A stretch of DNA of 63,882 nt, the filler included, from Octopus bimaculoides (taxonomy: Eukaryota): the NCBI RefSeq assembly GCF_001194135.2. It is 5 parts of 4 records of this genome, joined end to end, with 100 filler letters (N's around TTAATTAATTAA, not from the genome) between each part and the next. Parts side by side here need not be neighbours in the genome. Positions count along the whole stretch, not along the records: positions 41,124 to 53,454 come from NC_068981.1; 4 more parts are not named here. One strand, given 5' to 3'. The notes under the pieces are model-generated. The model was not told the origin of the DNA and searched no databases. It saw only the letters and a list, made by a program, of their open reading frames with translations. The translations under genes and the position numbers were made by a program. The first letter of the stretch is position 1, and the number at the start of each line of letters is the position of its first letter. Positions 40,792 to 53,695 of this stretch are shown one piece after another.

Positions 40792-41227
40792 TTATGTTTG
40801 ACTTTTGTTTTGCATTTGTACAAGTTGGATCCAAGTCTCACCCAGAGACCTCAAGAGACAACAAGTTAGAAGTTCATGTAGGTGTTATGCCTAGGGTACC
40901 ATATATTTGGATTTGTACAGTTTTGTTCAAGTGAATGTTTAAGAAACCATAAGAAAATTATGTGTTTGCTTTAAAATTTGAGATCACATAGACAGTATTT
41001 TACGTAGGATATGGGCAGTTCCCNNNNNNNNNNNNNNNNNNNNNNNNNNNNNNNNNNNNNNNNNNNNTTAATTAATTAANNNNNNNNNNNNNNNNNNNNN
41101 NNNNNNNNNNNNNNNNNNNNNNNTATATATTGATAGAAAGGACAACAAAAGTAAGAAAGAGACCTCGATATTATGTAAATAGAGGAATTTATTTGTAAAA
41201 ATATGGGACAGGAATTTTCAACGGGCG

Positions 41228-41288
41228 GATGACTGAAGAGATGTTGGCGTGGGTTCCCACCCCGGCATCCGAAACTCGGAGTTTTATC
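41228..41288 (+). ncRNA. Minimal type-I hammerhead ribozyme-like motif (paralogue of 17294-17354)
   Basis: GATGA-CTGAAGA-GATGTTGG-(GTGGG TT CCCAC hairpin)-CCGGCATC-C-GAAA-CTCGGAGT-T-TTATC. Confidence 0.55.
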
Positions 41289-41602
41289 ATGGCCACCGAA
41301 TAAGTGTCACATATTTTTACTGATATATATATATATTAAGGGATTAAGTCGATTACATCGACCGCAGTGCGCAACTGGTACTTATATATATATATGTATA
41401 TATATATATAATGTTGGCTATGATCATCGCTGACAAGTATTAAGTGTCGTCAGCAATGCCTGTAAAGGGTTTTAAGTCAAGTGCGGAATTGCACGACACC
41501 ACGATGACCCTCACTAGCAAAACCAAGAAGCCCAGAGACAAGCAAAAGTGCGAGATACCCGGTTCACTGCAGCAATGGGTTCTATATACGAGTTAGCCTT
41601 CC

Positions 41603-41805
41603 TATTTCTTTATTGCCCACAAGGGGCTAAACACAGAGGGGACAAACAAGGACAGACAAAGGGATTAAGTCGATTACATCGACCGCAGTGCGCAACTGGT
41701 ACTTAATTTATCGACCCCGAAAGGATGAAAGGCTAAGTCGACCTCGGCGGAATTTGAACTCAGAACGTAACGGCAGACGAAATACCGCTAAGCATTTCGC
41801 CCGGC
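41603..41805 (-). mobile_element. 5'-truncated SINE family B with 9-bp TSD
   Basis: TAGCCTTCC at 41594-41602 and 41806-41814. Confidence 0.88.
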
Positions 41806-42009
41806 TAGCCTTCCCTTAGAGGGATGCCTTGACATACATACATACATTTATGCATGCATGAATACATCATTATAGGTATGTGTGTGTGTGTGTGTGTTTG
41901 CATATATTCATATCTATATGTACATACATGTTTATATGCATACATACACACATTATATGTGTATATCTATCTATATCTATATCTATATATCTATATATAN
42001 NNNNNNNNN

Positions 42010-42051
<42 letters not shown>

Positions 42052-43547
42052 CGTTGTGCAGCTGCATGTGGAAATTTGATATAAAAGCAAAAAGTGCGAG
42101 TGAAAGATTCTATTTCTTAATACGAAAGACAACATACTTTTTAATCACTAGTTTATTGCCTGTTCTCGTTTTTGTTTGTTTAGTTTATTTTTCTGTATTG
42201 TGTATGCAAAATTTATCTGTTCATTATCTATCTCTAATTCATCTGTATACACATACATAAATGCATACATACCTATACATGTATATTTACACAAACATGC
42301 ACATACATTCATAGCATACATACATACATACATACATACATGCATGCATACATGCATGCATTTCTTCAAGTTGCATGCTGGTTCGAATGTCCCATCAGTA
42401 ATGTTTAGATCCATGATTCTCAATCAATTTATAATTCGGGATCCTTTTATTTGAATGAATTTTACCGAGTATCTTAGGCTTTTGAAAAGTCTGCTTACAA
42501 ATTGTGCTATTTTTGTTTGCTAACGGCAACTCGTTTTCTCAGTTTCATCTCTCAGTCAAAAGATAAATATAATTGAATAATCTTATATCACCAGAGTAAT
42601 TATATTTTCTATATTGCAGTCTTCAAAAATTTTGAGTATGGTACACAGACTCAAACTTCCAGCACTATGTAGGTTGAACTCCAGTTTCGGTTTAGACGAA
42701 GTGTTTCTTATTCAAGTTAGTTCGAAGTCATTGCTTTATTCACTTTTATCTTTTAATTTTTTCAGTCATTAGACCGTCCTGAGGGGGTTTTCCAGTGGTC
42801 CCTACGACCACTGCGGGTCCATATAAGATTTTTGGGGGACCACGCTAGCAAAATAATAAATTAGGAATTCACTGAAGTATTTTAAACATTCATGAAAAGA
42901 TTTGATTTAAATGCATGCATTGCAAGAAACAGCAAGGTTTCTTTCTCTAATATCTTACATTAATACAACCTATACAAGTCAATGTATGAATAAAAAACTA
43001 GAATTTTTGAAAGAAACATCTATAAAATTAGTTTTTATAAACATTAAATGGCTATGGGGATCCACCAGAGTCATACCCGGTAAGTTCACCGTCATCAATT
43101 CACCGCAGGGTAAGTTCATCGTTCGAAGATTTTGACATAATTTTTCAACTTCAATATTTCTCTCGTTTTTTTTTCTTCAATAAAGTATCATAGTTCTTAA
43201 CTATCAATGGTGAGTGAGATACTATGGATATGTTTTCTCGGTAAACTTTCCTCACGGTGAACTTTCTTCANNNNNNNNNNNNNNNNNNNNNNNNNNNNNN
43301 NNNNNNNNNNNNNNNNNNNNNNNNNNNNNNNNNNNNNNNNNNNNNNNNNNNNNNNNNNNNNNNNNNNNNNNNNNNNNNNNNNNNNNNNNNNNNNNNNNNN
43401 NNNNNNNNNNNNNNNNNNNNNNNNNNNNNNNNNNNNNNNNNNNNNNNNNNNNNNNNNNNNNNNNNNNNNNNNNNNNNNNNNNNNNNNNNNNNNNNNNNNN
43501 NNNNNNNNNNNNNNNNNNNNNNNNNNNNNNNNNNNNNNNNNNNNNNN

Positions 43548-43790
43548 GCGGTGGTGGGAGACACAAATAGAAAGACATAAATAGAATAACACAAATAGAA
43601 ACATACACACACACACACACACACACAGAGCTTGTTTCAGTTTCTGCCTGCCAAATCCACTCTCAAGGCTTTGGTCGTGCGAGGCTATAGTAGACGACAC
43701 CTGCTCAATGTCGCGAAGTGGGACTGAACCCAAGACCACATGGTCGGTAAGCCAGCTTCTTAACCACACAGTCATGCCTACAGCCACACT
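43548..43790 (-). mobile_element. SINE family A 5' half, degenerate
   Basis: Family A head and core on the minus strand. Confidence 0.8.
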
Positions 43791-45314
43791 TACATGATTA
43801 ACAATGGTGCTTTTTGTACACGAGTGTGGAATAATTCGTAATCTTGATAACTATTTGTTGCATTGACATATGCCTCTGCCGTTAAGGTATACTCAAACAT
43901 GGGCACAAGCATATGCATGTTCAACTCAGTGAAAAGGCAAAACCAAAAGAACAAAACGAACAATCTTTTTCAAACATTAGTTTACGTTAACTCTTTATGA
44001 GAACGAAATGCCGCCAGAGCTGCACTTAGACTTGGTTACACCCAAAGTTGCGTATATTAAACCTTAGTAGTTGCTTGTTAACTTATTATCCTTGAAAATC
44101 CCACAAATATTTGAAACGTATGTGCCTTTTAATTCCGAGTTCCTGTACTGTCGAATTCCGAGGTCCTGTACTGTAATCTAGTTATCTTACACATTAATCT
44201 TGTACCGTAGGTCATGACATCATTTGTTTATCGATGACATTAGCGAACTTACTTGAATTGCTGAGACCAGGAATCGAAATTTGGTCGCAAAGTCAACTCG
44301 CCGGAAGCTATTTATCGTAGTCTATGACATTTCGTTACCCGCTCCGTTTGCGGGCTTAAAATGTAAGATTTACATATAAAAGAGACATAGCGCAATATTG
44401 AAATGTTTATTCCTTTCGTTGGGACGTTAATCGTATAAGTGGTATAAAATTACTGCAAACATGTGTAGTTTGATCTTCCTTTAATTCGATGGAATTTCTA
44501 AATGGAGGAGCCAATACATTGCAGGTCTATACAAAAATCTGTCAGAAATATCAACCAAAATGTCGCTCAAAAATCATATCATCTTCAAAAAGGAAGGATA
44601 TATTAAATAATGTAGTCCTAGATATGCTATGCCTGATAAAGAAAAAAGATGAGATGGTGGATGGTCAAAACACCTACGATGAAAGATTTGCTTGATCAGG
44701 GTTTCTAGGATTAAACAACTACTTCGGTTTCTTTTTATTGAACACAGGACATGTATGTTTTCAGAGGACAGGAAACTACACTTTTTACGGTGCTCATGGA
44801 TATTAATAGGCACGAGTATAATGAAATGAATTAATTTCAACTGGGAATGGAAACCGTTTCGCTGAATCAGCTTGCTTGGAGTTTATCACTTTCAAGGCTC
44901 GTTGGGAGCCTCTTTGTACGAATGAATAACAACGATCATCATGCTTTGGGAAATTTTAAATATTTTCACTTGGAGCAAAGTTCTATAGAATTTAGACGAG
45001 TGACAGAAATTGTACCATTCATATTGAATATTGATTACGTAAGTGAAGTAAATGGACTTGAAACAAGGATCGAAAACAGCTCGTAGCGGACTTATCACTT
45101 GTTTTGCGACAAACGCTATTTCTTCTTACGCTGATTTTCGAAAGGAATGCTCAATAAACTTTATTTTTGAAATGTGGAAGTAAGAGAAGGGTAGTGTACA
45201 CAGGATTGTATACATTTAGGTAGGATTTGTATTCAGAACTTACAAAGACAAAACTGCATAACTATTTTTGTACACTGTCGTCCGAGTCTCTAATTTCGTT
45301 TTCGTTTCTTTTCT

Positions 45315-45358
45315 TATAAGTTGCCGTACTCTCGGCTTCGAGAGTACGGCAGCTTATA
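45315..45358. other. 20-bp near-perfect hairpin with 4-nt loop
   Basis: TATAAGTTGCCGTACTCTCG-GCTT-CGAGAGTACGGCAGCTTATA (one G-T pair). Confidence 0.9.
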
Positions 45359-46150
45359 TTTTCCTTTGAGTGCGACTCAAAAGTTTGCCGTGCATCCGAG
45401 AGGACGAAGTTTATAATTTTCATAAGCCTGTTCTAATCCCAAAGAAGGTATGCTAAACTTATTGTGTCTCCAAACGGTAAGAAAACAAAATGAAGGCTAT
45501 AAATAATAGGACCGATATGTTGCTAAACCACAGCCAAAACATTTTGGCTGCGGTTTGTGAAAGTCGTGAAACCTTGTTTTTTATGTTATCCTTTTTAGAA
45601 AAATTCCAAGTCATAATAAGGGTGCATCTTTGGAGTAAAAGTGTCTTCGACCCCCAGAAATACGGGAGTCCGACAAGGAGAGGATAGTGTCCCTAACATT
45701 AGAGGATAGTGTCCCTAACGTTCGTAGGTCCTCCTACACTCGTGAGAGGGACGGAGCAGAAGCCCAGCCAAAACATCTGCGGGTCAATGATGTAGATGAT
45801 TGGTTCGAATAGTTGCCACAAAGCGAACATATCTAAATGCTCCTAAAGACCTGGTAGTGGTGTTAAATAGGATGGCGTCTTTGGACTACTATACAAAATA
45901 TCAAGAATAACCCGAACAAATAACAGCAAAATAACGGTAGAAATAGCAATACTACTATGAGAAGCGATAACAGTACTAGGATTATGTTGGCGAGACCAAA
46001 AATGTTTTAGAATATTAATTTGATGTGGGAAGACGAAATATCTAGAGCTTCGAACAGAACACATTAATCGGAGATTTAAGAGAATACGAAGAAAACTAAC
46101 ACAGGAAGTTATGACAACACTGGGAAAAAAATTACCGAAATGCCACTCAC

Positions 46151-46307
46151 CATTTGCTCGAAGATCATTAAGTCGAAAATTTTTATCCTGCTCAATCTTG
46201 GGGACATCCCGCCAGCACTCTTTCTCCAGAGCATTTTGTAATTTGGCCGACAAGAGAATCTCCTCCGATGTTATATTCCGTTTTTTGATTAAGAATGACC
46301 GAGGCAT
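46151..46307 (-). CDS. First coding exon of a SNAG-domain protein (Snail/Scratch/Gfi1/Ovo-type N-terminus); downstream exons not identified
   Basis: MPRSFLIKKRNITSEEILL... is a canonical SNAG motif at the initiator Met; 52 codons + 1 nt, then donor AATG|GTGAGT (46150); non-repetitive sequence. Confidence 0.85.
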
Positions 46308-46520
46308 TTAAACAGTTCGAACGTATACGAAGCAAAGAAATTAGCGTTGAAATAATTTTAATAGTAATTAGAACAATGATAAAAACGACAATAGAAATGG
46401 CAATAGATGAAAATTAAATAATAAATATTAACAACACAGATAAAATCCGAGAAATTGTGATATTTCCAATGAGAAAGATAGGATCTCTTTTTGTTTTAAA
46501 ACAGATCGATAATAAGTCAG
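46308..46520 (-). other. 5' UTR portion of exon 2 of the SNAG gene
   Basis: Branch-like GCTAAT, then TTTTATTTTTATTTAG| acceptor at 46522-46521; no ATG between it and 46307. Confidence 0.6.
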
Positions 46521-47382
46521 CTAAATAAAAATAAAATCCGTCAATCGATTAGCTTCAAGGGAGTTTTTCTTTGTTTTTCTGTTTCTTAAGTCCGAGATGA
46601 GTTAAGTTTCTTTCGTTGATAACTCACAAATATACATACATATATACATACATGCATAAGCATGTATGTATACATAGAGACAAAACTCCTAACTTATGTC
46701 TGTATAGTGGTACACACAAGTATAAATGCATGCATATTTATAAGCATTTATGTATGTATGGTTGTATATGTATATATATATATATATATGTTATGTAGAG
46801 AGCAGGTGTAGATATAGATGTATAAAAGTGGACTTTTATACCTGTACTTAAACAAGATTAGATTTGATAATCAGTAACTTTTGTAATGTTAGTCTTATAG
46901 TTTTTTGTTTTTTGGTGGTGGTGGTGGTGGTGGTGGTGGTGGGGTACTTTTTGGTGCTATGTAATCAAATTTGAAAACATAAACATTTAATACGTATATT
47001 TATTAGCAAATATATTAACATACGGTTGCATTAACGTATGTATGTGTATAATCATATACATATATATATATATATGTGAATGTATTTGCGTGTATATTGA
47101 CTAGATATGTCTATATTTATATACAAATATATATTTATATATATATATAAACGAGTAGATATATTAAATAGGAATATAATGTTATTTGTGTGTGTGTGTG
47201 TGTGTGTGTGTATATTTACATATACGTATCAGTTATATATGCATGTACAGATAATTTTATATATCAGTTATCTGACGCCGTGTTCACCTGTGAGCATATG
47301 TGTATGCATATATATCTATATATATATATATATACATTAATCTGTGTGTGTGTGCGTTCGTTATGTTCAGTTCAGAACGTAC

Positions 47383-47421
47383 CTGTACGCATCTATCTAA
47401 GCAGGCGTACAGAATTTGAGT
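47383..47421 (-). other. Predicted 39-nt first exon of the SNAG gene
   Basis: Starts at the Inr A (47421) and ends at donor CAG|GTACGT (47382). Confidence 0.55.
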
Positions 47422-47451
47422 GACTACAGTGCAGCGGTGTGACTTTATATA
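47418..47451 (-). promoter_or_regulatory. Core promoter: TATA box + initiator
   Basis: TATATAAA at 47451-47444; TCACTC (YYANWY) with its A at 47421, exactly 30 bp from the first T; GC-box-like GGGGCG motifs just upstream. Confidence 0.65.
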
Positions 47452-48187
47452 TCACGAGTGTCGCCCCCATTAGCGCCCCTACAACACACCTTATCCTTTT
47501 CTTCTGTTTTCTTTTTTCTTCTCTCTCTCTTCCTCCTTCTACTTCTGTTCAACCACATGCTGTCGGGCTATTGTTTGCTCTCTCCCCACCACCACTACCA
47601 CCACTTACTGATAGTTTTTTCCTATTTTTTTCTTTCTTTCTTTTACCTAACCTTCTATTTCCTCCATAAGGCACTACGGCGACGAGTAACTCCCCCTCCA
47701 CACCGCTATGAACGCCTGCACACTCATAAACGCACACGCGTACACACTCACACACTTTCATGCCACCACCGTTAACCACGTTACCACCATCACCACCACC
47801 ACCACCACCACTTCAACCAGCATACAACCTCTGCGTATATACGATCATTCGGCCTGCTAGAAGTTACAGCTAGTTTCCTTTCAATCCACACTGTTCNNNN
47901 NNNNNNAAAAAAAAAACAAAAACAAGGAAAAAAAAAGTACACATTAGCAAATGTACTTCGAGGCCACAGCTGGTCAAACAATGGAGAAAACGGGAGTTAA
48001 AGAATCCTGACCACAACAACATTAAACCAAGAACATTACAGCAACAACAACACGCTCAAAGGCCAAACGAGGATCTCTGAGTAGTCGCTCGATGTACTAG
48101 AAATAACTGTTAAACTCTCTCAACTAAATCCCTTACTGCTTTACTGCTTTACACACACACGTACACACACACACACACACACATAGT

Positions 48188-48384
48188 TTTTTTACTTGCT
48201 TCAGTCATTTCACTGCGGCCATACCGGAGCACCGTCTTAAAAGGGTTTTATTAGTCGAACAAATCGACCCCAGGACTTATTCTTTGTAAGCCTAGTCCTT
48301 ATTCTATCGGTCGCTTTTATCGAACCGCTAAGTTACGTGGACGTAAACACCGATATCGGTTGTCAAGCGATGGTAGTGGAGACA
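48188..48384 (-). mobile_element. SINE family A 3' half
   Basis: Family A 3' module on the minus strand, running into a gap. Confidence 0.85.
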
Positions 48385-49197
48385 NNNNNNNNNNNNNNNN
48401 NNNNNNNNNNNNNNNNNNNNNNNNNNNNNNNNNNNNNNNNNNNNNNNNNNNNNNNNNNNNNNNNNNNNNNNNNNNNNNNNNNNNNNNNNNNNNNNNNNNN
48501 NNNNNNNNNNNNNNNNNNNNNNNNNNNNNNNNNNNNNNNNNNNNNNNNNNNNNNNNNNNNNNNNNNNNNNNNNNNNNNNNNNNNNNNNNNNNNNNNNNNN
48601 NNNNNNNNNNNNNNNNNNNNNNNNNNNNNNNNNNNNNNNNNNNNNNNNNNNNNNNNNNNNNNNNNNNNNNNNNNNNNNNNNNNNNNNNNNNNNNNNNNNN
48701 NNNNNNNNNNNNNNNNNNNNNNNNNNNNNNNNNNNNNNNNNNNNNNNNNNNNNNNNNNNNNNNNNNNNNNNNNNNNNNNNNNNNNNNNNNNNNNNNNNNN
48801 NNNNNNNNNNNNNNNNNNNNNNNNNNNNNNNNNNNNNNNNNNNNNNNNNNNNNNNNNNNNNNNNNNNNNNNNNNNNNNNNNNNNNNNNNNNNNNNNNNNN
48901 NNNNNNNNNNNNNNNNNNNNNNNNNNNNNNNNNNNNNNNNNNNNNNNNNNNNNNNNNNNNNNNNNNNNNNNNNNNNNNNNNNNNNNNNNNNNNNNNNNNN
49001 NNNNNNNNNNNNNNNNNNNNNNNNNNNNNNNNNNNNNNNNNNNNNNNNNNNNNNNNNNNNNNNNNNNNNNNNNNNNNNNNNNNNNNNNNNNNNNNNNNNN
49101 NNNNNNNNNNNNNNNNNNNNNNNNNNNNNNNNNNNNNNNNNNNNNNNNNNNNNNNNNNNNNNNNNNNNNNNNNNNNNNNNNNNNNNNNNNNNNNNNA

Positions 49198-49440
49198 TAG
49201 TGTTAATTCAAAAAAACCCATTATGAGGTTCGCAAGGACTGGTGCAGCTTTAGTACCCATCGCGATACCACATTTTTGGCGAAAGTATGTGTCTGCAAAC
49301 AGGAAGTAATTGTTGGTCAGAATGAACTTAAGTGATTCTATGATGAAAGTTGTGTTGATGCGATTAGGAAATGTTTCTGGGTGTTTGTGCAGCCAGAATT
49401 TAATTGCCTCAATCGCATATTCATGAGGGATATTTGTATA
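49198..49440 (-). mobile_element. Penelope-like element reverse-transcriptase core fragment
   Basis: YTNIPHEYAIEAIKFWL...LKFILTNNYFLFADTYFRQKCGIAMGTKAAPVLANLIMGFFE contains the PLE RT motifs YTNIP, NNYF.F....Y.Q..G.AMG and P..AN..M...E. Confidence 0.88.
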
Positions 49441-51319
49441 TATATATATATATATATATATATGTAAAACAAATAATAAATGAGTATATGCATATATACG
49501 TACAAGTATGTGCATACCTACATCTACCTGTATATATAGGTGCATATCTGGGTACAGGACGTTGCAAACAAAACGTAGACAAAAAAAAATAATAACCAGA
49601 GTATGCCCCGGCAGGGCCGCAGCCCAATGATTGAAACGAGTAAAAGATAAAAGATATATGTATAATATATATGCATCGGGGATGCCTCTAACTGGTCGCT
49701 CGATGTACTAGAAATAACAGTTAAATTCTCTCTCAAAAGAAAAACTCCTTTACTGCCTTACACACACATAATTTGGCGTTTGTATATTTGCGTTATATGT
49801 GGTGCAAATCCTCGTGCTAGATAGCCGGGGTAGTCAAGGATGGATTGCTATCGATTATTGGGAGATGGATGTCAAAGGTTGACTCGGAGTTAAATAACAA
49901 CAATAAAAAACAACAAGAACAAACTAACAATCGTCGTCTGAGACACTCGTGCACCTTTCCCTCTCTTCCACTCCTACTGTCCCTCACGCTCTCCCTCCTT
50001 TCTTCTTTGCCGTCAGGGCACGCTTCTCCCTCTGTCTCTCTTTCCTACCTCCCCTTCACGGCACGCTTCTCTTTCTCCGCCTCTATCTCTCTATCTCTCT
50101 CTTCCTCTCTCTCTCTCTCGTTTNNNNNNNNNNNNNNNNNNNNNNNNNNNNNNNNNNNNNNNNNNNNNNNNNNNNNNNNNNNNNNNNNNNNNNNNNNNNN
50201 NNNNNNNNNNNNNNNNNNNNNNNNNNNNNNNNNNNNNNNNNNNNNNNNNNNNNNNNNNNNNNNNNNNNNNNNNNNNNNNNNNNNNNNNNNNNNNNNNNNN
50301 NNNNNNNNNNNNNNNNNNNNNNNNNNNNNNNNNNNNNNNNNNNNNNNNNNNNNNNNNNNNNNNNNNNNNNNNNNNNNNNNNNNNNNNNNNNNNNNNNNNN
50401 NNNNNNNNNNNNNNNNNNNNNNNNNNNNNNNNNNNNNNNNNNNNNNNNNNNNNNNNNNNNNNNNNNNNNNNNNNNNNNNNNNNNNNNNNNNNNNNNNNNN
50501 NNNNNNNNNNNNNNNNNNNNNNNNNNNNNNNNNNNNNNNNNNNNNNNNNNNNNNNNNNNNNNNNNNNNNNNNNNNNNNNNNNNNNNNNNNNNNNNNNNNN
50601 NNNNNNNNNNNNNNNNNNNNNNNNNNNNNNNNNNNNNNNNNNNNNNNNNNNNNNNNNNNNNNNNNNNNNNNNNNNNNNNNNNNNNNNNNNNNNNNNNNNN
50701 NNNNNNNNNNNNNNNNNNNNNNNNNNNNNNNNNNNNNNNNNNNNNNNNNNNNNNNNNNNNNNNNNNNNNNNNNNNNNNNNNNNNNNNNNNNNNNNNNNNN
50801 NNNNNNNNNNNNNNNNNNNNNNNNNNNNNNNNNNNNNNNNNNNNNNNNNNNNNNNNNNNNNNNNNNNNNNNNNNNNNNNNNNNNNNNNNNNNNNNNNNNN
50901 NNNNNNNNNNNNNNNNNNNNNNNNNNNNNNNNNNNNNNNNNNNNNNNNNNNNNNNACCACCACCACCACGAACCACCACCACCACCACCACTACTACTAC
51001 TACTACCACCATTACTTTAAGCAGGTATTTCCTCCTTAATTGGGTTTTAATTTTTCCTTATGCCCTCTAGCACTTCTTTTTCTCTCTTACTTTCCCTTTT
51101 CCAACTCTCCCCCCTCTCTTCCCCTCTCTTTCTATTTCCTTATCTTTGTTCATTTTTTCATCTCTTTATCGCGCTCACATTCTCTTATCCTTCCTTCCTT
51201 CCTTCCTTCCTTCCTTCCTTCCTCCTCCTCTCTCTCTCTCTCTTTTTTCTTTCTCTATCTCTTCTCTGTTTTTCTCCTTATATGTGTATGCATAACTCGA
51301 ACTGTGTGCCAATGTGTTA

Positions 51320-51535
51320 AGAAGTTTGCTTCCTAACCAATTGGTTCCGGGTATTGTCCAACTGCATGGCACCATTGGGCAAGTGTCTTCTACTATAACA
51401 TCGGGTCGGCCATAGCCTTGTGAATAGATTTGGTAGACGGATACTGAAAGAACCCGTCATTCGGGTGTGTGTGTGTGTGTGTAGCTGTCCTCCACCACCG
51501 CTTGACAACTGGTTCGACAAAAGGAACCCGATAGA
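51320..51535 (+). mobile_element. SINE family A, degenerate
   Basis: Head, core and start of the 3' module. Confidence 0.78.
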
Positions 51536-51556
51536 CCAGGCTTTAGAAACATTCAT

Positions 51557-51780
51557 ATTCTTTATTGCCCACAAGGGGCTAAGCATAGAGGAAACAAGCA
51601 AGGACAGACAAAGGGATTAAGTCGATTACATCGATCCCAGTGCGTAACTGGTACTTATTTAATCGACCCCGAATGGATGAAAGGCAAAGTCGACCTCGGC
51701 GGAATTTGAACTCAGAACGTAGCAGCAGACGAAATACCGCTAAGCATTTCGCCCGGCGTGCTAACGTTTCTGCCAGCAAC
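51557..51780 (-). mobile_element. SINE family B copy
   Basis: Near-consensus copy. Confidence 0.9.
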
Positions 51781-51819
51781 CGGCTTTAAAAACATTCGTT
51801 CAACTAAAGCCCTTTAAGG

Positions 51820-51871
51820 TGTTGTTGTTGTTGTTGTTGTTGTTTGTCTTCTTCTTCTTCTTCTTCTTCTT

Positions 51872-51902
<31 letters not shown>

Positions 51903-51930
51903 TTCTTCATCATCATCATCATCATCACCT
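51820..51930. repeat. Compound (GTT)n(CTT)n(CAT)n microsatellite
   Basis: Read directly. Confidence 0.97.
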
Positions 51931-51970
51931 GAGACACATGTCAGTGGATCTAAGAGCAAGCTGCTAGATA

Positions 51971-52385
51971 CTCTTTCTCTTTACTCTTTTACTTGTTTCG
52001 GTCATTTGACTGTGGCCATGCTGGAGCACCGCCTTTAGTCGAGCAAATCGACCCCAGGACTTATTCTTTGTAAGCCTAGTACTTATTCTATCGGTCTCTT
52101 TCGCCGAACCGCTAAGTTACAGGGACGTAAACACACCACCATCGGTTGTCAAGCGATGTTGGGGGGACAAACAGACACACAAACATATACATAAACATAC
52201 ATATATAGATATGCATATATACGACGGGCTTCTTTCAGTTTCCGCCTACCAAATTCACTCACAAGGCTTTGGTCGGCCTAAGGCTAAAAGTAGAAGACAC
52301 TTGCCCAAGGTGCCACGCAGTGGGACTGAACCCGGAACCATGTGGTTGGTAAGCAAGCTACTTACCACACAGCCACTCCCACGCC
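51971..52385 (-). mobile_element. Full-length SINE family A
   Basis: Near-consensus reverse complement of 5217-5652. Confidence 0.92.
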
Positions 52386-52399
52386 TATATATATATTTA

Positions 52400-52830
52400 T
52401 TGTTGGCACTCCGTCGCTTACGACGTCGAGGGTTCCAGTTGATCCGATCAACGGAACAGCCTGCTCGTGAAATTAACGTGCAAGTGGCTGAGCACTCCAC
52501 AGACACGTGTACCCGTAACGTAGTTCTCGGGGATATTCAGCGTGACACAGAAACANNNNNNNNNNNNNNNNNNNNNNNNNNNNNNNNNNNNNNNNNNNNN
52601 NNNNNNNNNNNNNNNNNNNNNNNNNNNNNNNNNNNNNNNNNNNNNNNNNNNNNNNNNNNNNNNNNNNNNNNNNNNNNNNNNNNNNNNNNNNNNNNNNNNN
52701 NNNNNNNNNNNNNNNNNNNNNNNNNNNNNNNNNNNNNNNNNNNNNNNNNNNNNNNNNNNNNNNNNNNNNNNNNNNNNNNNNNNNNNNNNNNNNNNNNNGC
52801 TGCGCTAACCACTAGGCCATTGCGCCTCCA
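52400..52830 (-). mobile_element. SINE family C (middle in gap)
   Basis: 3' part at 52400-52555 and tRNA head at 52799-52830. Confidence 0.88.
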
Positions 52831-52889
52831 CATATATTATATATACAGGTGTACATTCATGTATGTATGTATGTATGTATGTATGTATG

Positions 52890-52921
<32 letters not shown>

Positions 52922-53695
52922 ATTTCAACCTTAGTAATTATAGCTACTCCAGCAACAACAACTACAACATTAATAATGATGATGAATGATATCTCAGTCA
53001 TGAGCCGGACGAGTGAGGTGGGGGTGGGGAAGAAACAGGCAATCTTAAAGTAAAAGCCCCAAAATCTGGAAGTTAACAAGCCAGAAAGAATTTGAGTTCA
53101 CCTGAAAGCCTGGATGCCCTCTGTTCCAGACAGGTGAGCGATTCTCTGTTTCAGGTATTATGTTACTTTGTTAGTAAGTTAGTTAATGTGAGAAAGAGAG
53201 AGAGAGAGAGAGAGAGGGGAGAAAGAGGGGGGAGTGAGTGTAAGTAAATGTATAAGAAAGTATGTGCATGTGCCTACTTGAGTGCAGGATTATATATGCA
53301 TATCATTTATCTTTTACTTGAAGAATTTTTAGTCGAATGAATGTATTGGTCTCTTTTGTCGAACCGCTAAGTTACGGGGACGTAAATACACCAGCGCCGA
53401 TTGTCAAGCAGTGATGGAGGACAAACATAGACACAAAGACACACACACCCGTATNNNNNNNNNNNNNNNNNNNNNNNNNNNNNNNNNNNNNNNNNNNNTT
53501 AATTAATTAANNNNNNNNNNNNNNNNNNNNNNNNNNNNNNNNNNNNNNNNNNNNGTATATCCATATGTATATATCTGTATATGTATATACATATATATGT
53601 ATACATATGTATATACATATATATGTATACATATGTATATACATATATATGTATACATATGTATATACCTATATATGTATACACATATATATGAT

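What the first reader, a model, noticed from the sequence alone, without database searches (positions are those of the whole stretch)
46151..47451. SNAG-motif gene with complete promoter and 5' structure but no visible DNA-binding exons in 46 kb
Seen: TATA at -30, Inr, a 39-nt exon 1, an 862-nt intron and exon 2 encoding MPRSFLIKK followed by 43 residues I do not recognise. By-eye scanning of the non-gap minus strand down to position 1 found no C2H2 (CxxC...HxxxH, TGEKP) or homeobox coding segment. Established: SNAG must be N-terminal and recruits LSD1-CoREST-HDAC in Snail, Scratch, Gfi1, Insm and Ovo proteins. Inference: either an exceptionally long TE-inflated intron in a developmental repressor, exons hidden in gaps, or a lineage-specific SNAG protein with a different or absent effector domain.
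Basis: partly seen in the sequence, partly recalled or inferred. Interest (0 to 1): 0.72.

Follow-up and report, generated by a model that had tools for sequence, protein, structure and literature searches.

The report
First exon of a SNAG repressor gene
This is almost certainly the first protein-coding exon of an ordinary SNAG-type (Snail/Scratch/Gfi/Ovo-like) repressor gene; its DNA-binding exons look absent only because about 5 kb of real sequence follows the exon.

Summary
The core observation holds. On the minus strand an ATG at 46307, with an in-frame TAA directly before it, opens MPRSFLIKK plus 43 more residues. The frame meets a consensus donor (G|GTGAGT) at 46151/46150 in phase 1. A strict SNAG 9-mer is expected 3e-7 times by chance in this piece.

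The exon is a purine-rich island between T-rich flanks. It follows the longest gap-free ATG-free run on that strand (330 nt). None can be verified without transcript data, and exon 1 adds an upstream ATG.

The headline claim, no DNA-binding exons in 46 kb, is void. Only 5,027 nt of real sequence (287 of them N) lie downstream before the piece ends.

The 43-residue tail matched nothing in two very large protein libraries, Pfam or PDB. It also showed no significant similarity to 16 Snail, Scratch and Ovo N-termini. The first 11 residues are closest to mollusc Snail (MPRAFLIKKRD). Ovo, Scratch and Gfi cannot be excluded.

Verdict: an ordinary first coding exon of a SNAG repressor, family unresolved. 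Interest is low, with a small chance of a lineage-specific SNAG protein.

The parts
47462..47479 (-). Two GGGGCG (GC-box-like) hexamers, at 47479-47474 and 47467-47462, just upstream of the candidate TATA box
   Evidence: These are the only two GGGGCG in the whole piece on either strand. A promoter role is an inference.
47443..47451 (-). Candidate TATA box, TATATAAAG
   Evidence: It starts 30 nt upstream of the proposed start site. TATA-like matches are abundant in this AT- and microsatellite-rich DNA, so on its own it is weak evidence.
47383..47421 (-).
   Evidence: It contains an ATG (47392-47390) that would open a 38-codon upstream ORF ending inside exon 2. There is no transcript evidence.
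46521..47382 (-). Proposed intron 1 (862 nt, GT...AG), made mostly of (TA)n, (CA)n and (CCA)n microsatellites
   Evidence: This is a model only. A start site inside 46520-46640 is an equally possible alternative, because the ATG-free stretch runs up to 46637.
46308..46520 (-). 5' untranslated part of the coding exon; T-rich, no ATG, ends with an in-frame TAA directly before the start codon
   Evidence: 0 ATG in 213 nt against 2.8 expected, and 4.7% of shuffles also have none. One search shows T-rich period-3 low complexity in a phase different from the coding frame.
46281..46307 (-). SNAG motif MPRSFLIKK (codons 1-9)
   Evidence: Chance expectation is 3e-7 per piece. The same V7I variant occurs in Branchiostoma Snail and Capitella Scratch 4, and FLIKK occurs in Lottia, Patella and Platynereis Snail.
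46151..46307 (-). Coding part of the exon: 52 codons plus the first base (G) of a split codon
   Evidence: Purine fraction is 0.53-0.57 against 0.34-0.38 in both flanks. AlphaFold2 without an alignment predicts a helix at residues 14-31, with block pLDDT 83-89.
46145..46150 (-). Splice donor GTGAGT (context AATG|GTGAGT), phase 1
   Evidence: It is one of only two GGTRAGT sites on this strand in about 10 kb.
41124..46144 (-). Start of the next intron, running to the edge of the piece; contains N gaps (43271-43547, 42000-42009), SINE-like repeats and microsatellites; no further recognisable exon
   Evidence: There is no C2H2, TGEKP or homeobox pattern in six frames. tblastn with 120 OVOL proteins, Lottia OVOL1 and Drosophila Svb found nothing beyond the SNAG exon. 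Repeats are listed.

Best explanation
The locus is the 5' end of a gene for a SNAG-type transcriptional repressor, transcribed on the minus strand.

Shown:
- The first coding exon starts at ATG 46307 and encodes the N-terminal SNAG motif plus a 43-residue lineage-divergent tail.
- It ends at a phase-1 donor at 46151/46150.

Inferred:
- The DNA-binding exons, most likely C2H2 zinc fingers of the Snail/Scratch, Gfi or Ovo kind, lie beyond the edge of the piece, across a first coding intron longer than 5 kb.
- After removal of the initiator Met, the free Pro-Arg-Ser-Phe N-terminus would insert into the LSD1 active site as a mimic of the histone H3 tail. This would bring LSD1-CoREST-HDAC to the sites bound by the DNA-binding domain.

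My rough split within this explanation is Snail/Scratch about 45%, Ovo about 25%, Gfi about 20% and other about 10%.
For: - The motif is at the very start of the reading frame, with a stop codon directly upstream.
- The strict motif is expected 3e-7 times by chance in the piece, which scales to about 0.08 for a genome of an assumed ~2.7 Gb (my assumption, extrapolated from the per-site rate).
- The frame ends at a consensus donor, one of two GGTRAGT sites on that strand, where composition switches from purine-rich to T-rich.
- The 330 nt upstream are free of ATG.
- A TATA box with the piece's only two GGGGCG hexamers lies about 1.1 kb upstream.
- The V7I form of the motif is normal in Snail and Scratch: Branchiostoma Snail MPRSFLIKKK, Capitella Scratch 4 MPRSFLIKKH, Lottia Snail 1 and Patella Snail 2 MPRAFLIKKRD (9 of 11 identical to MPRSFLIKKRN), Platynereis Snail 1 MPKSFLIKKH (PMC2688512 supplement).
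- Ovo proteins also start this way: Drosophila Svb MPKIFLIKNR and Lottia OVOL1 MPKSYMIKR (PMC3380836 supplement).
- Pigeon OVOL2 has a short first coding exon of 33 codons ending in phase 1, as here.
- A SNAIL residue 1-9 peptide is reported to bind the LSD1 active site with a Ki of 0.14 uM, and its Pro1 and Arg2 are reported as critical (PMC13316430). Both residues are present here.
Against: - No DNA-binding exon was seen, although only 5 kb could be examined.
- No protein carrying this exon was found. The word-indexed search of 5.8 billion clusters found nothing. It recruited no candidate even when MPRSFLVKK was supplied, so its negative is weak. phmmer against 1.84 billion representatives returned only a spurious tandem-repeat protein. 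The exact read-through ORF is not on record either.
- That library does hold animal proteins. So the exon is unannotated, weakly expressed, or from a genome the library lacks.
- The tail has no significant similarity to any of 16 Snail, Scratch or Ovo N-termini (lowest p 0.04 before correction for 16 tests) or to the vertebrate OVOL W-x-E-L-P-D-E box (p 0.05-0.12).
- The context of the start codon (T at -3) is not optimal.
Confidence: 0.72

Rival explanations
1. A lineage-specific SNAG protein. The exon is real and expressed, but it joins to exons encoding a different DNA-binding domain or none. In the latter case the product could be a small LSD1-binding decoy or adaptor made of the SNAG hook plus a helix.
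For: The 43-residue tail has no detectable relative in 1.84 billion representative proteins, Pfam or PDB. No protein with this exon was found in a library that does contain animal proteins. Residues 14-31 are predicted as a helix, which differs from the Ser/Pro-rich disordered stretch that follows the motif in many Snail and Gfi proteins (own knowledge).
Against: Regions just after the SNAG motif are poorly conserved even within families (PMC2688512), and none of the 16 compared N-termini matched the tail. Lack of similarity is therefore expected for an ordinary member too. All well-studied proteins with this exact N-terminus are zinc-finger repressors (own knowledge). The absence of fingers rests on only 5 kb.
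Confidence: 0.1
2. A non-functional relic: a duplicated or orphaned first exon of a SNAG gene that is no longer transcribed or spliced into a productive mRNA.
For: No predicted or transcript-derived protein in the libraries contains it. The surroundings are dense with SINE-like repeats, a possible reverse-transcriptase fragment and microsatellites. The start-codon context is weak.
Against: The reading frame, the motif, the stop codon directly upstream, the donor consensus and the ATG-free leader are all intact. That would not be expected to persist in decaying sequence.
Confidence: 0.13
3. The whole 154-codon ORF (46307-45843) is one unspliced small gene, encoding a SNAG motif followed by hydrophobic segments.
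For: The frame stays open for 102 codons beyond the donor. Only 0.5% of mononucleotide shuffles do so, and T reaches 58% at third positions. It is the longest gap-free ORF in the piece.
Against: The stretch after the donor is T-rich low complexity with an NNT periodicity. The non-coding leader shows the same kind of periodicity in a different phase. Composition changes sharply at the consensus donor. The 154-residue product has no Pfam match and is not on record in the gene collection. A nuclear LSD1-binding hook fused to membrane-like segments makes little biological sense.
Confidence: 0.03
4. Chance resemblance in non-coding DNA.
For: None beyond the general abundance of short ORFs in the piece.
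Against: The expected number of strict matches is 3e-7 in the piece. The motif also coincides with a start-of-frame position, a consensus donor and an ATG-free leader.
Confidence: 0.01

Closest known systems
[quoted passage not shown]
   Same: Both have an N-terminal SNAG-1 box. The first 11 residues MPRSFLIKKRN match MPRAFLIKKRD at 9 of 11 positions (Lottia and Patella Snail) and MPRSFLIKKH/K at 9 of 11 (Capitella Scratch 4, Branchiostoma Snail). An acidic, Ser-containing stretch follows the motif (TSEE here, SESE or TEES in the mollusc Snails).
   Different: No zinc fingers are visible in the piece. There is no SNAG-2, SCRATCH or SLUG box. The tail has no significant similarity to these proteins (p 0.2-1.0). 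Position 4 is Ser here and Ala in the mollusc Snails.
Ovo/OVOL/Shavenbaby family
   Same: The family has a SNAG-like N-terminus MP[KR]xF[LM][IV]K (Drosophila Svb MPKIFLIKNR, Lottia OVOL1 MPKSYMIKR, fish OVOL3b MPRSFLVK). Pigeon OVOL2 has a short first coding exon ending in phase 1. The tail's best placement on the OVOL W-x-E-L-P box is at CWRDVP. There is a weak match, LQNALEKEC against LQFKLEEKC, in Lottia OVOL1 (p 0.04 before correction).
   Different: None of the tail similarities survives correction for multiple tests (OVOL box p 0.05-0.12; Svb tail p 0.8-0.9). No Ovo-type fingers occur in the piece. The spacing between the motif and the W is 22 residues against 9 in vertebrate OVOL.
Gfi1/Gfi1b/Senseless family
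   Same: From my own knowledge, these proteins carry the N-terminal MPRSFLVK SNAG motif that recruits LSD1-CoREST, with the first coding exon separate from the finger exons.
INSM1/Nerfin
   Same: From my own knowledge, INSM1 has a SNAG-like N-terminus that binds LSD1.
   Different: From my own knowledge, the INSM1 motif is MPRGFLVKR (Gly at position 4) and the vertebrate gene has no introns. Here position 4 is Ser and the exon ends at a splice donor.

Membership tests
SNAG-domain repressors (functional class) | Motif sits at the extreme N-terminus, directly after the initiator Met | tested here: met
   ATG at 46307 is preceded by an in-frame TAA, so the frame cannot extend upstream.
SNAG-domain repressors (functional class) | Consensus M-P-R-S-F-L-V-K-K/R, with Pro and Arg as the residues critical for LSD1 | tested here: met
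   MPRSFLIKK matches at 8 of 9 positions, with V7I. The same variant occurs in accepted family members. Pro1 and Arg2 are reported as critical in PMC13316430.
SNAG-domain repressors (functional class) | Binds the LSD1 active site and recruits CoREST/HDAC | not testable with these tools
   This needs a binding or repression assay.
SNAG-domain repressors (functional class) | A sequence-specific DNA-binding domain (usually C2H2 fingers) in the same polypeptide | tested here: inconclusive
   None is present in the 5,027 nt available downstream. The piece ends inside the intron.
Snail/Scratch superfamily | Four to six C2H2 fingers with the signature ...CGKAFSRPWLLQGH... | tested here: inconclusive
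   No C2H2 pattern occurs in six frames of the piece. The finger exons would lie outside it.
Snail/Scratch superfamily | Accessory boxes (SNAG-2, SCRATCH, SLUG, CtBP sites) | tested here: not met
   The tail shows no similarity to the 13 Snail or Scratch N-termini among the 16 compared. These boxes are often absent in true members (PMC2688512), so this carries little weight.
Ovo/OVOL/Shavenbaby | Four C2H2 fingers with ...CGKGFNDTFDLKRH... | tested here: inconclusive
   tblastn with 120 OVOL proteins found only the SNAG exon in the piece.
Ovo/OVOL/Shavenbaby | N-terminal MP[KR]xF[LM][IV]K followed by the W-x-E-L-P-D-E-x-R box (vertebrates) | tested here: inconclusive
   The motif is met. The box gives its best placement at KECWRDVPKIEQDKNFRL, with a negative PSSM score and p 0.05-0.12.
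Ovo/OVOL/Shavenbaby | Short first coding exon ending in a phase-1 intron | tested here: met
   Pigeon OVOL2 has 33 codons plus 1 nt. Here there are 52 codons plus 1 nt. Phase alone matches by chance one time in three.
Gfi/Senseless | Six C2H2 fingers of the Gfi type after a SNAG N-terminus | not tested

The most novel reading that the evidence does not exclude
The exon belongs to a lineage-restricted SNAG protein with no zinc fingers. It could be a short LSD1-binding hook plus helix acting as a decoy or adaptor, or a SNAG hook fused to a different DNA-binding domain. That would explain why neither the exon nor its tail appears in billions of predicted proteins.
Probability: 0.08. Interest if true: 0.6.

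Novelty: new member of a known kind. Interest (0 to 1): 0.2.

Why it matters
If the ordinary reading is right, the practical value is for annotation. A real first coding exon of a developmental repressor, with a candidate TATA promoter, is missing from every protein set searched here. Gene models for this locus probably lack their repression domain. That matters when inferring whether the factor recruits LSD1-CoREST. Only if the exon turned out to join something other than zinc fingers would it add a new architecture to the SNAG class.

Tried and rejected
- **Word-indexed homology search.** I searched with the 52-residue peptide, and again with an added I7V copy. Neither found a candidate. The second failed even though it contained the common motif MPRSFLVKK and the library holds animal proteins. 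This negative is therefore weak.
- **phmmer against 1.84 billion representatives.** The single hit, P0001, is a 1,011-residue tandem-repeat protein. It scores by adding 14 weak repeat matches and was rejected as spurious.
- **Other library searches.** Exact look-up of the 154-residue read-through ORF found nothing. Pfam gave only a sub-threshold stray hit (Bac_small_YrzI, E 0.08, 13.5 bits against a 23-bit cutoff) for the exon peptide, and nothing for the 154-residue ORF. PDB gave nothing. The JGI metagenome scan gave 600 pattern matches, none confirmed. Full-text searches for MPRSFLIKK, for related strings, and for SNAG domain plus cephalopod found nothing useful.
- **Chimeric query.** I joined the exon to an Ovo finger consensus to pull out Ovo proteins carrying a similar N-terminus. 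It returned 1,210 OVOL proteins, of which the best 120 were listed, all vertebrate or arthropod. None had a tail similar to this exon.
- **Ovo hypothesis.** I tested it with a PSSM for the OVOL box, by alignment to Drosophila Svb and Lottia OVOL1, and by intron phase. The results are suggestive at best and not significant.
- **A resemblance I recalled between the tail and human GFI1B.** I dropped it because it rested on memory only and lies in a non-conserved region.
- **Rfam and tRNA scans.** These gave only sub-threshold hits on microsatellites.
- **The 154-codon ORF as a real gene.** I rejected this because both T-rich flanks show period-3 low complexity in different phases.

Full report
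**What could be examined**

Only 41124-53454 is real sequence: 12,331 nt, of which 2,184 are N in six gaps. The DNA is AT-rich and full of microsatellites. It also carries SINE-like dispersed repeats. The finding lies on the minus strand. Upstream is therefore towards higher coordinates, and only 5,027 nt (46150-41124) lie downstream of the exon.

**The observation**

- TATATAAAG lies at 47451-47443.
- An Inr-like TCACTCA has its A at 47421, a 6 of 7 fit to YYANWYY.
- A 39-nt segment ends at CAG|GTACGT (47383|47382).
- An acceptor, ttttatttag|CTG, lies at 46521|46520, giving an 862-nt GT...AG interval.
- An ATG at 46307 opens MPRSFLIKKRNITSEEILLSAKLQNALEKECWRDVPKIEQDKNFRLNDLRAN.
- That frame ends at AATG|GTGAGT (46151|46150), in phase 1.

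**Is it more than chance?**

For the coding exon, clearly yes.
- A strict SNAG 9-mer, MPRSFL[IV]K[KR], is expected 3e-7 times in the piece. For an assumed genome of about 2.7 Gb (my figure), the same per-site rate gives about 0.08 matches.
- An in-frame TAA sits directly before the ATG, so the motif is truly N-terminal.
- GGTRAGT occurs only twice on this strand in about 10 kb, and one copy ends this frame.
- The 330 nt before the ATG contain no ATG. This is the longest such run on the strand that does not span an assembly gap.
- The 52 codons are purine-rich (0.53-0.57), while both flanks are T-rich (purine 0.34-0.38).

The promoter and exon 1 are plausible but remain a model.
- Matches to TATAWAWR number more than 80, mostly inside (TA)n arrays. 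Other non-repeat TATA boxes exist, for example at 46840.
- Against its neatness, exon 1 carries an ATG that opens a 38-codon upstream ORF.
- The ATG-free leader continues past the proposed acceptor to 46637. A start site within the same exon is an equally good alternative.

**The headline claim**

'No DNA-binding exons in 46 kb' cannot stand. The remaining 5 kb show no C2H2, TGEKP or homeobox pattern in six frames. tblastn with 120 OVOL proteins, Lottia OVOL1 and Drosophila Svb found nothing there beyond the SNAG exon. A first coding intron longer than 5 kb in a repeat-rich genome is unremarkable.

**The open frame beyond the donor**

The frame stays open for 102 codons after the donor, which gives a 154-codon ORF. 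Only 0.5% of shuffles do this, and T reaches 58% at third positions.

I considered whether the exon is really longer and rejected the idea. The downstream stretch is NNT-type low complexity. The clearly non-coding leader shows an equally strong period-3 T bias in a different phase. Composition switches exactly at the consensus donor. The 154-residue product has no Pfam match and is not on record in the gene collection.

**Which gene is it?**

The 43-residue tail has no detectable relative.
- The word-indexed search of 5.8 billion clusters recruited no candidate. It also recruited none when MPRSFLVKK was supplied, so its negative is weak.
- phmmer over 1.84 billion representatives returned only a spurious tandem-repeat protein.
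- Pfam gave only a sub-threshold stray hit for the peptide, PDB gave nothing, and the metagenome scan confirmed no match.
- A chimeric query, the exon plus an Ovo finger consensus, showed that the library does hold animal proteins. It returned 1,210 OVOL hits, and none of the 120 listed carries this exon.

I then compared the peptide with N-termini taken from two paper supplements (PMC3380836 and PMC2688512).
- The first 11 residues are closest to mollusc Snail. Lottia Snail 1 and Patella Snail 2 read MPRAFLIKKRD, 9 of 11 identical.
- Capitella Scratch 4 and Branchiostoma Snail (MPRSFLIKKH/K) also reach 9 of 11, with a slightly lower substitution score.
- Ovo proteins share the motif type: Drosophila Svb reads MPKIFLIKNR and Lottia OVOL1 reads MPKSYMIKR.
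- Beyond residue 11, none of 16 N-termini gives a significant match. The lowest p is 0.04, for Lottia OVOL1, before correction for 16 tests.
- The vertebrate OVOL W-x-E-L-P-D-E box places best at CWRDVP but is not significant (p 0.05-0.12).
- Pigeon OVOL2 has a 33-codon first coding exon ending in phase 1, as here. Phase alone matches one time in three.

Gfi sequences could not be retrieved. The family therefore stays unresolved. This is expected, because sequence after SNAG-1 is poorly conserved even within the Snail superfamily (PMC2688512).

**Mechanism**

Steps shown here:
- A reading frame begins Met-Pro-Arg-Ser-Phe-Leu-Ile-Lys-Lys.
- It is followed by a predicted helix at residues 14-31. 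This comes from AlphaFold2 run without an alignment, with mean pLDDT 70.

Steps from the literature:
- Pro1 and Arg2 of the SNAIL SNAG domain are reported as critical for engaging the LSD1 substrate site.
- A residue 1-9 SNAIL peptide is reported to bind that site with a Ki of 0.14 uM (PMC13316430).

Steps inferred:
- After removal of the initiator Met, the N-terminus of this protein would dock into LSD1.
- It would bring LSD1-CoREST-HDAC to sites chosen by a DNA-binding domain encoded further downstream.

**Verdict**

This is a real and probably functional first coding exon of a SNAG repressor gene. It is absent from every protein set I could search. It is a new member of a known kind, not a new architecture. 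Confidence in this reading is 0.72. The rivals are an orphaned relic exon (0.13), a lineage-specific SNAG protein without the usual fingers (0.10), the unspliced 154-codon ORF (0.03) and chance (0.01 or less). Interest is 0.2.

Noticed in passing
window 49197-49545 (minus strand), next to the N gap at 48385-49196: An ORF fragment ...NIPHEYAIEAIKFWLHKHPETFPNRINTTFIIESLKFILTNNYFLFADTYFRQKCGIAMGTKAAPVLANLIMGFFELTL runs into the gap. From memory, the G-x-AMG...AP-x-x-AN-x-x-M pattern resembles a reverse-transcriptase motif of Penelope-like or LINE elements. Pfam gave no hit.
   Followed up: partly
window 41606-41805 and 51558-51757 (93% identical); 41338-41384 (47-nt partial copy); 48251-48350 and 52035-52134 (92%); 52089-52165 and 53344-53420 (83%); 43591-43762 and 52189-52364 (75-80%): Several families of dispersed short direct repeats look like SINE-type elements and flank the gene on both sides. 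ARAGORN finds no intact tRNA in the piece.
   Followed up: partly
window 46150-45843 (minus strand): The SNAG frame stays open for 102 codons past the splice donor, with 58% T at third positions. I attribute this to NNT-type low complexity, because the 5' leader shows a similar period-3 bias in another phase. The origin of this periodic T-rich sequence on both sides of the exon is unexplained.
   Followed up: partly
   Followed up: yes
It could be an alternative promoter, but several ATGs lie between it and the coding start.
   Followed up: no
window 41830-42361, 46612-47368, 52836-53322: Sub-threshold Rfam hits to mir-297, mir-466, mir-3149 and similar families all fall on (TA)n, (CA)n or (CATA)n microsatellites and are artefacts of low complexity.
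   Followed up: yes
protein P0001 (not in the window): The only phmmer hit is a 1,011-residue protein built of about 14 near-identical 70-residue tandem repeats, probably a translated satellite. It reached E = 3e-18 only by summing weak repeat matches.
   Followed up: yes
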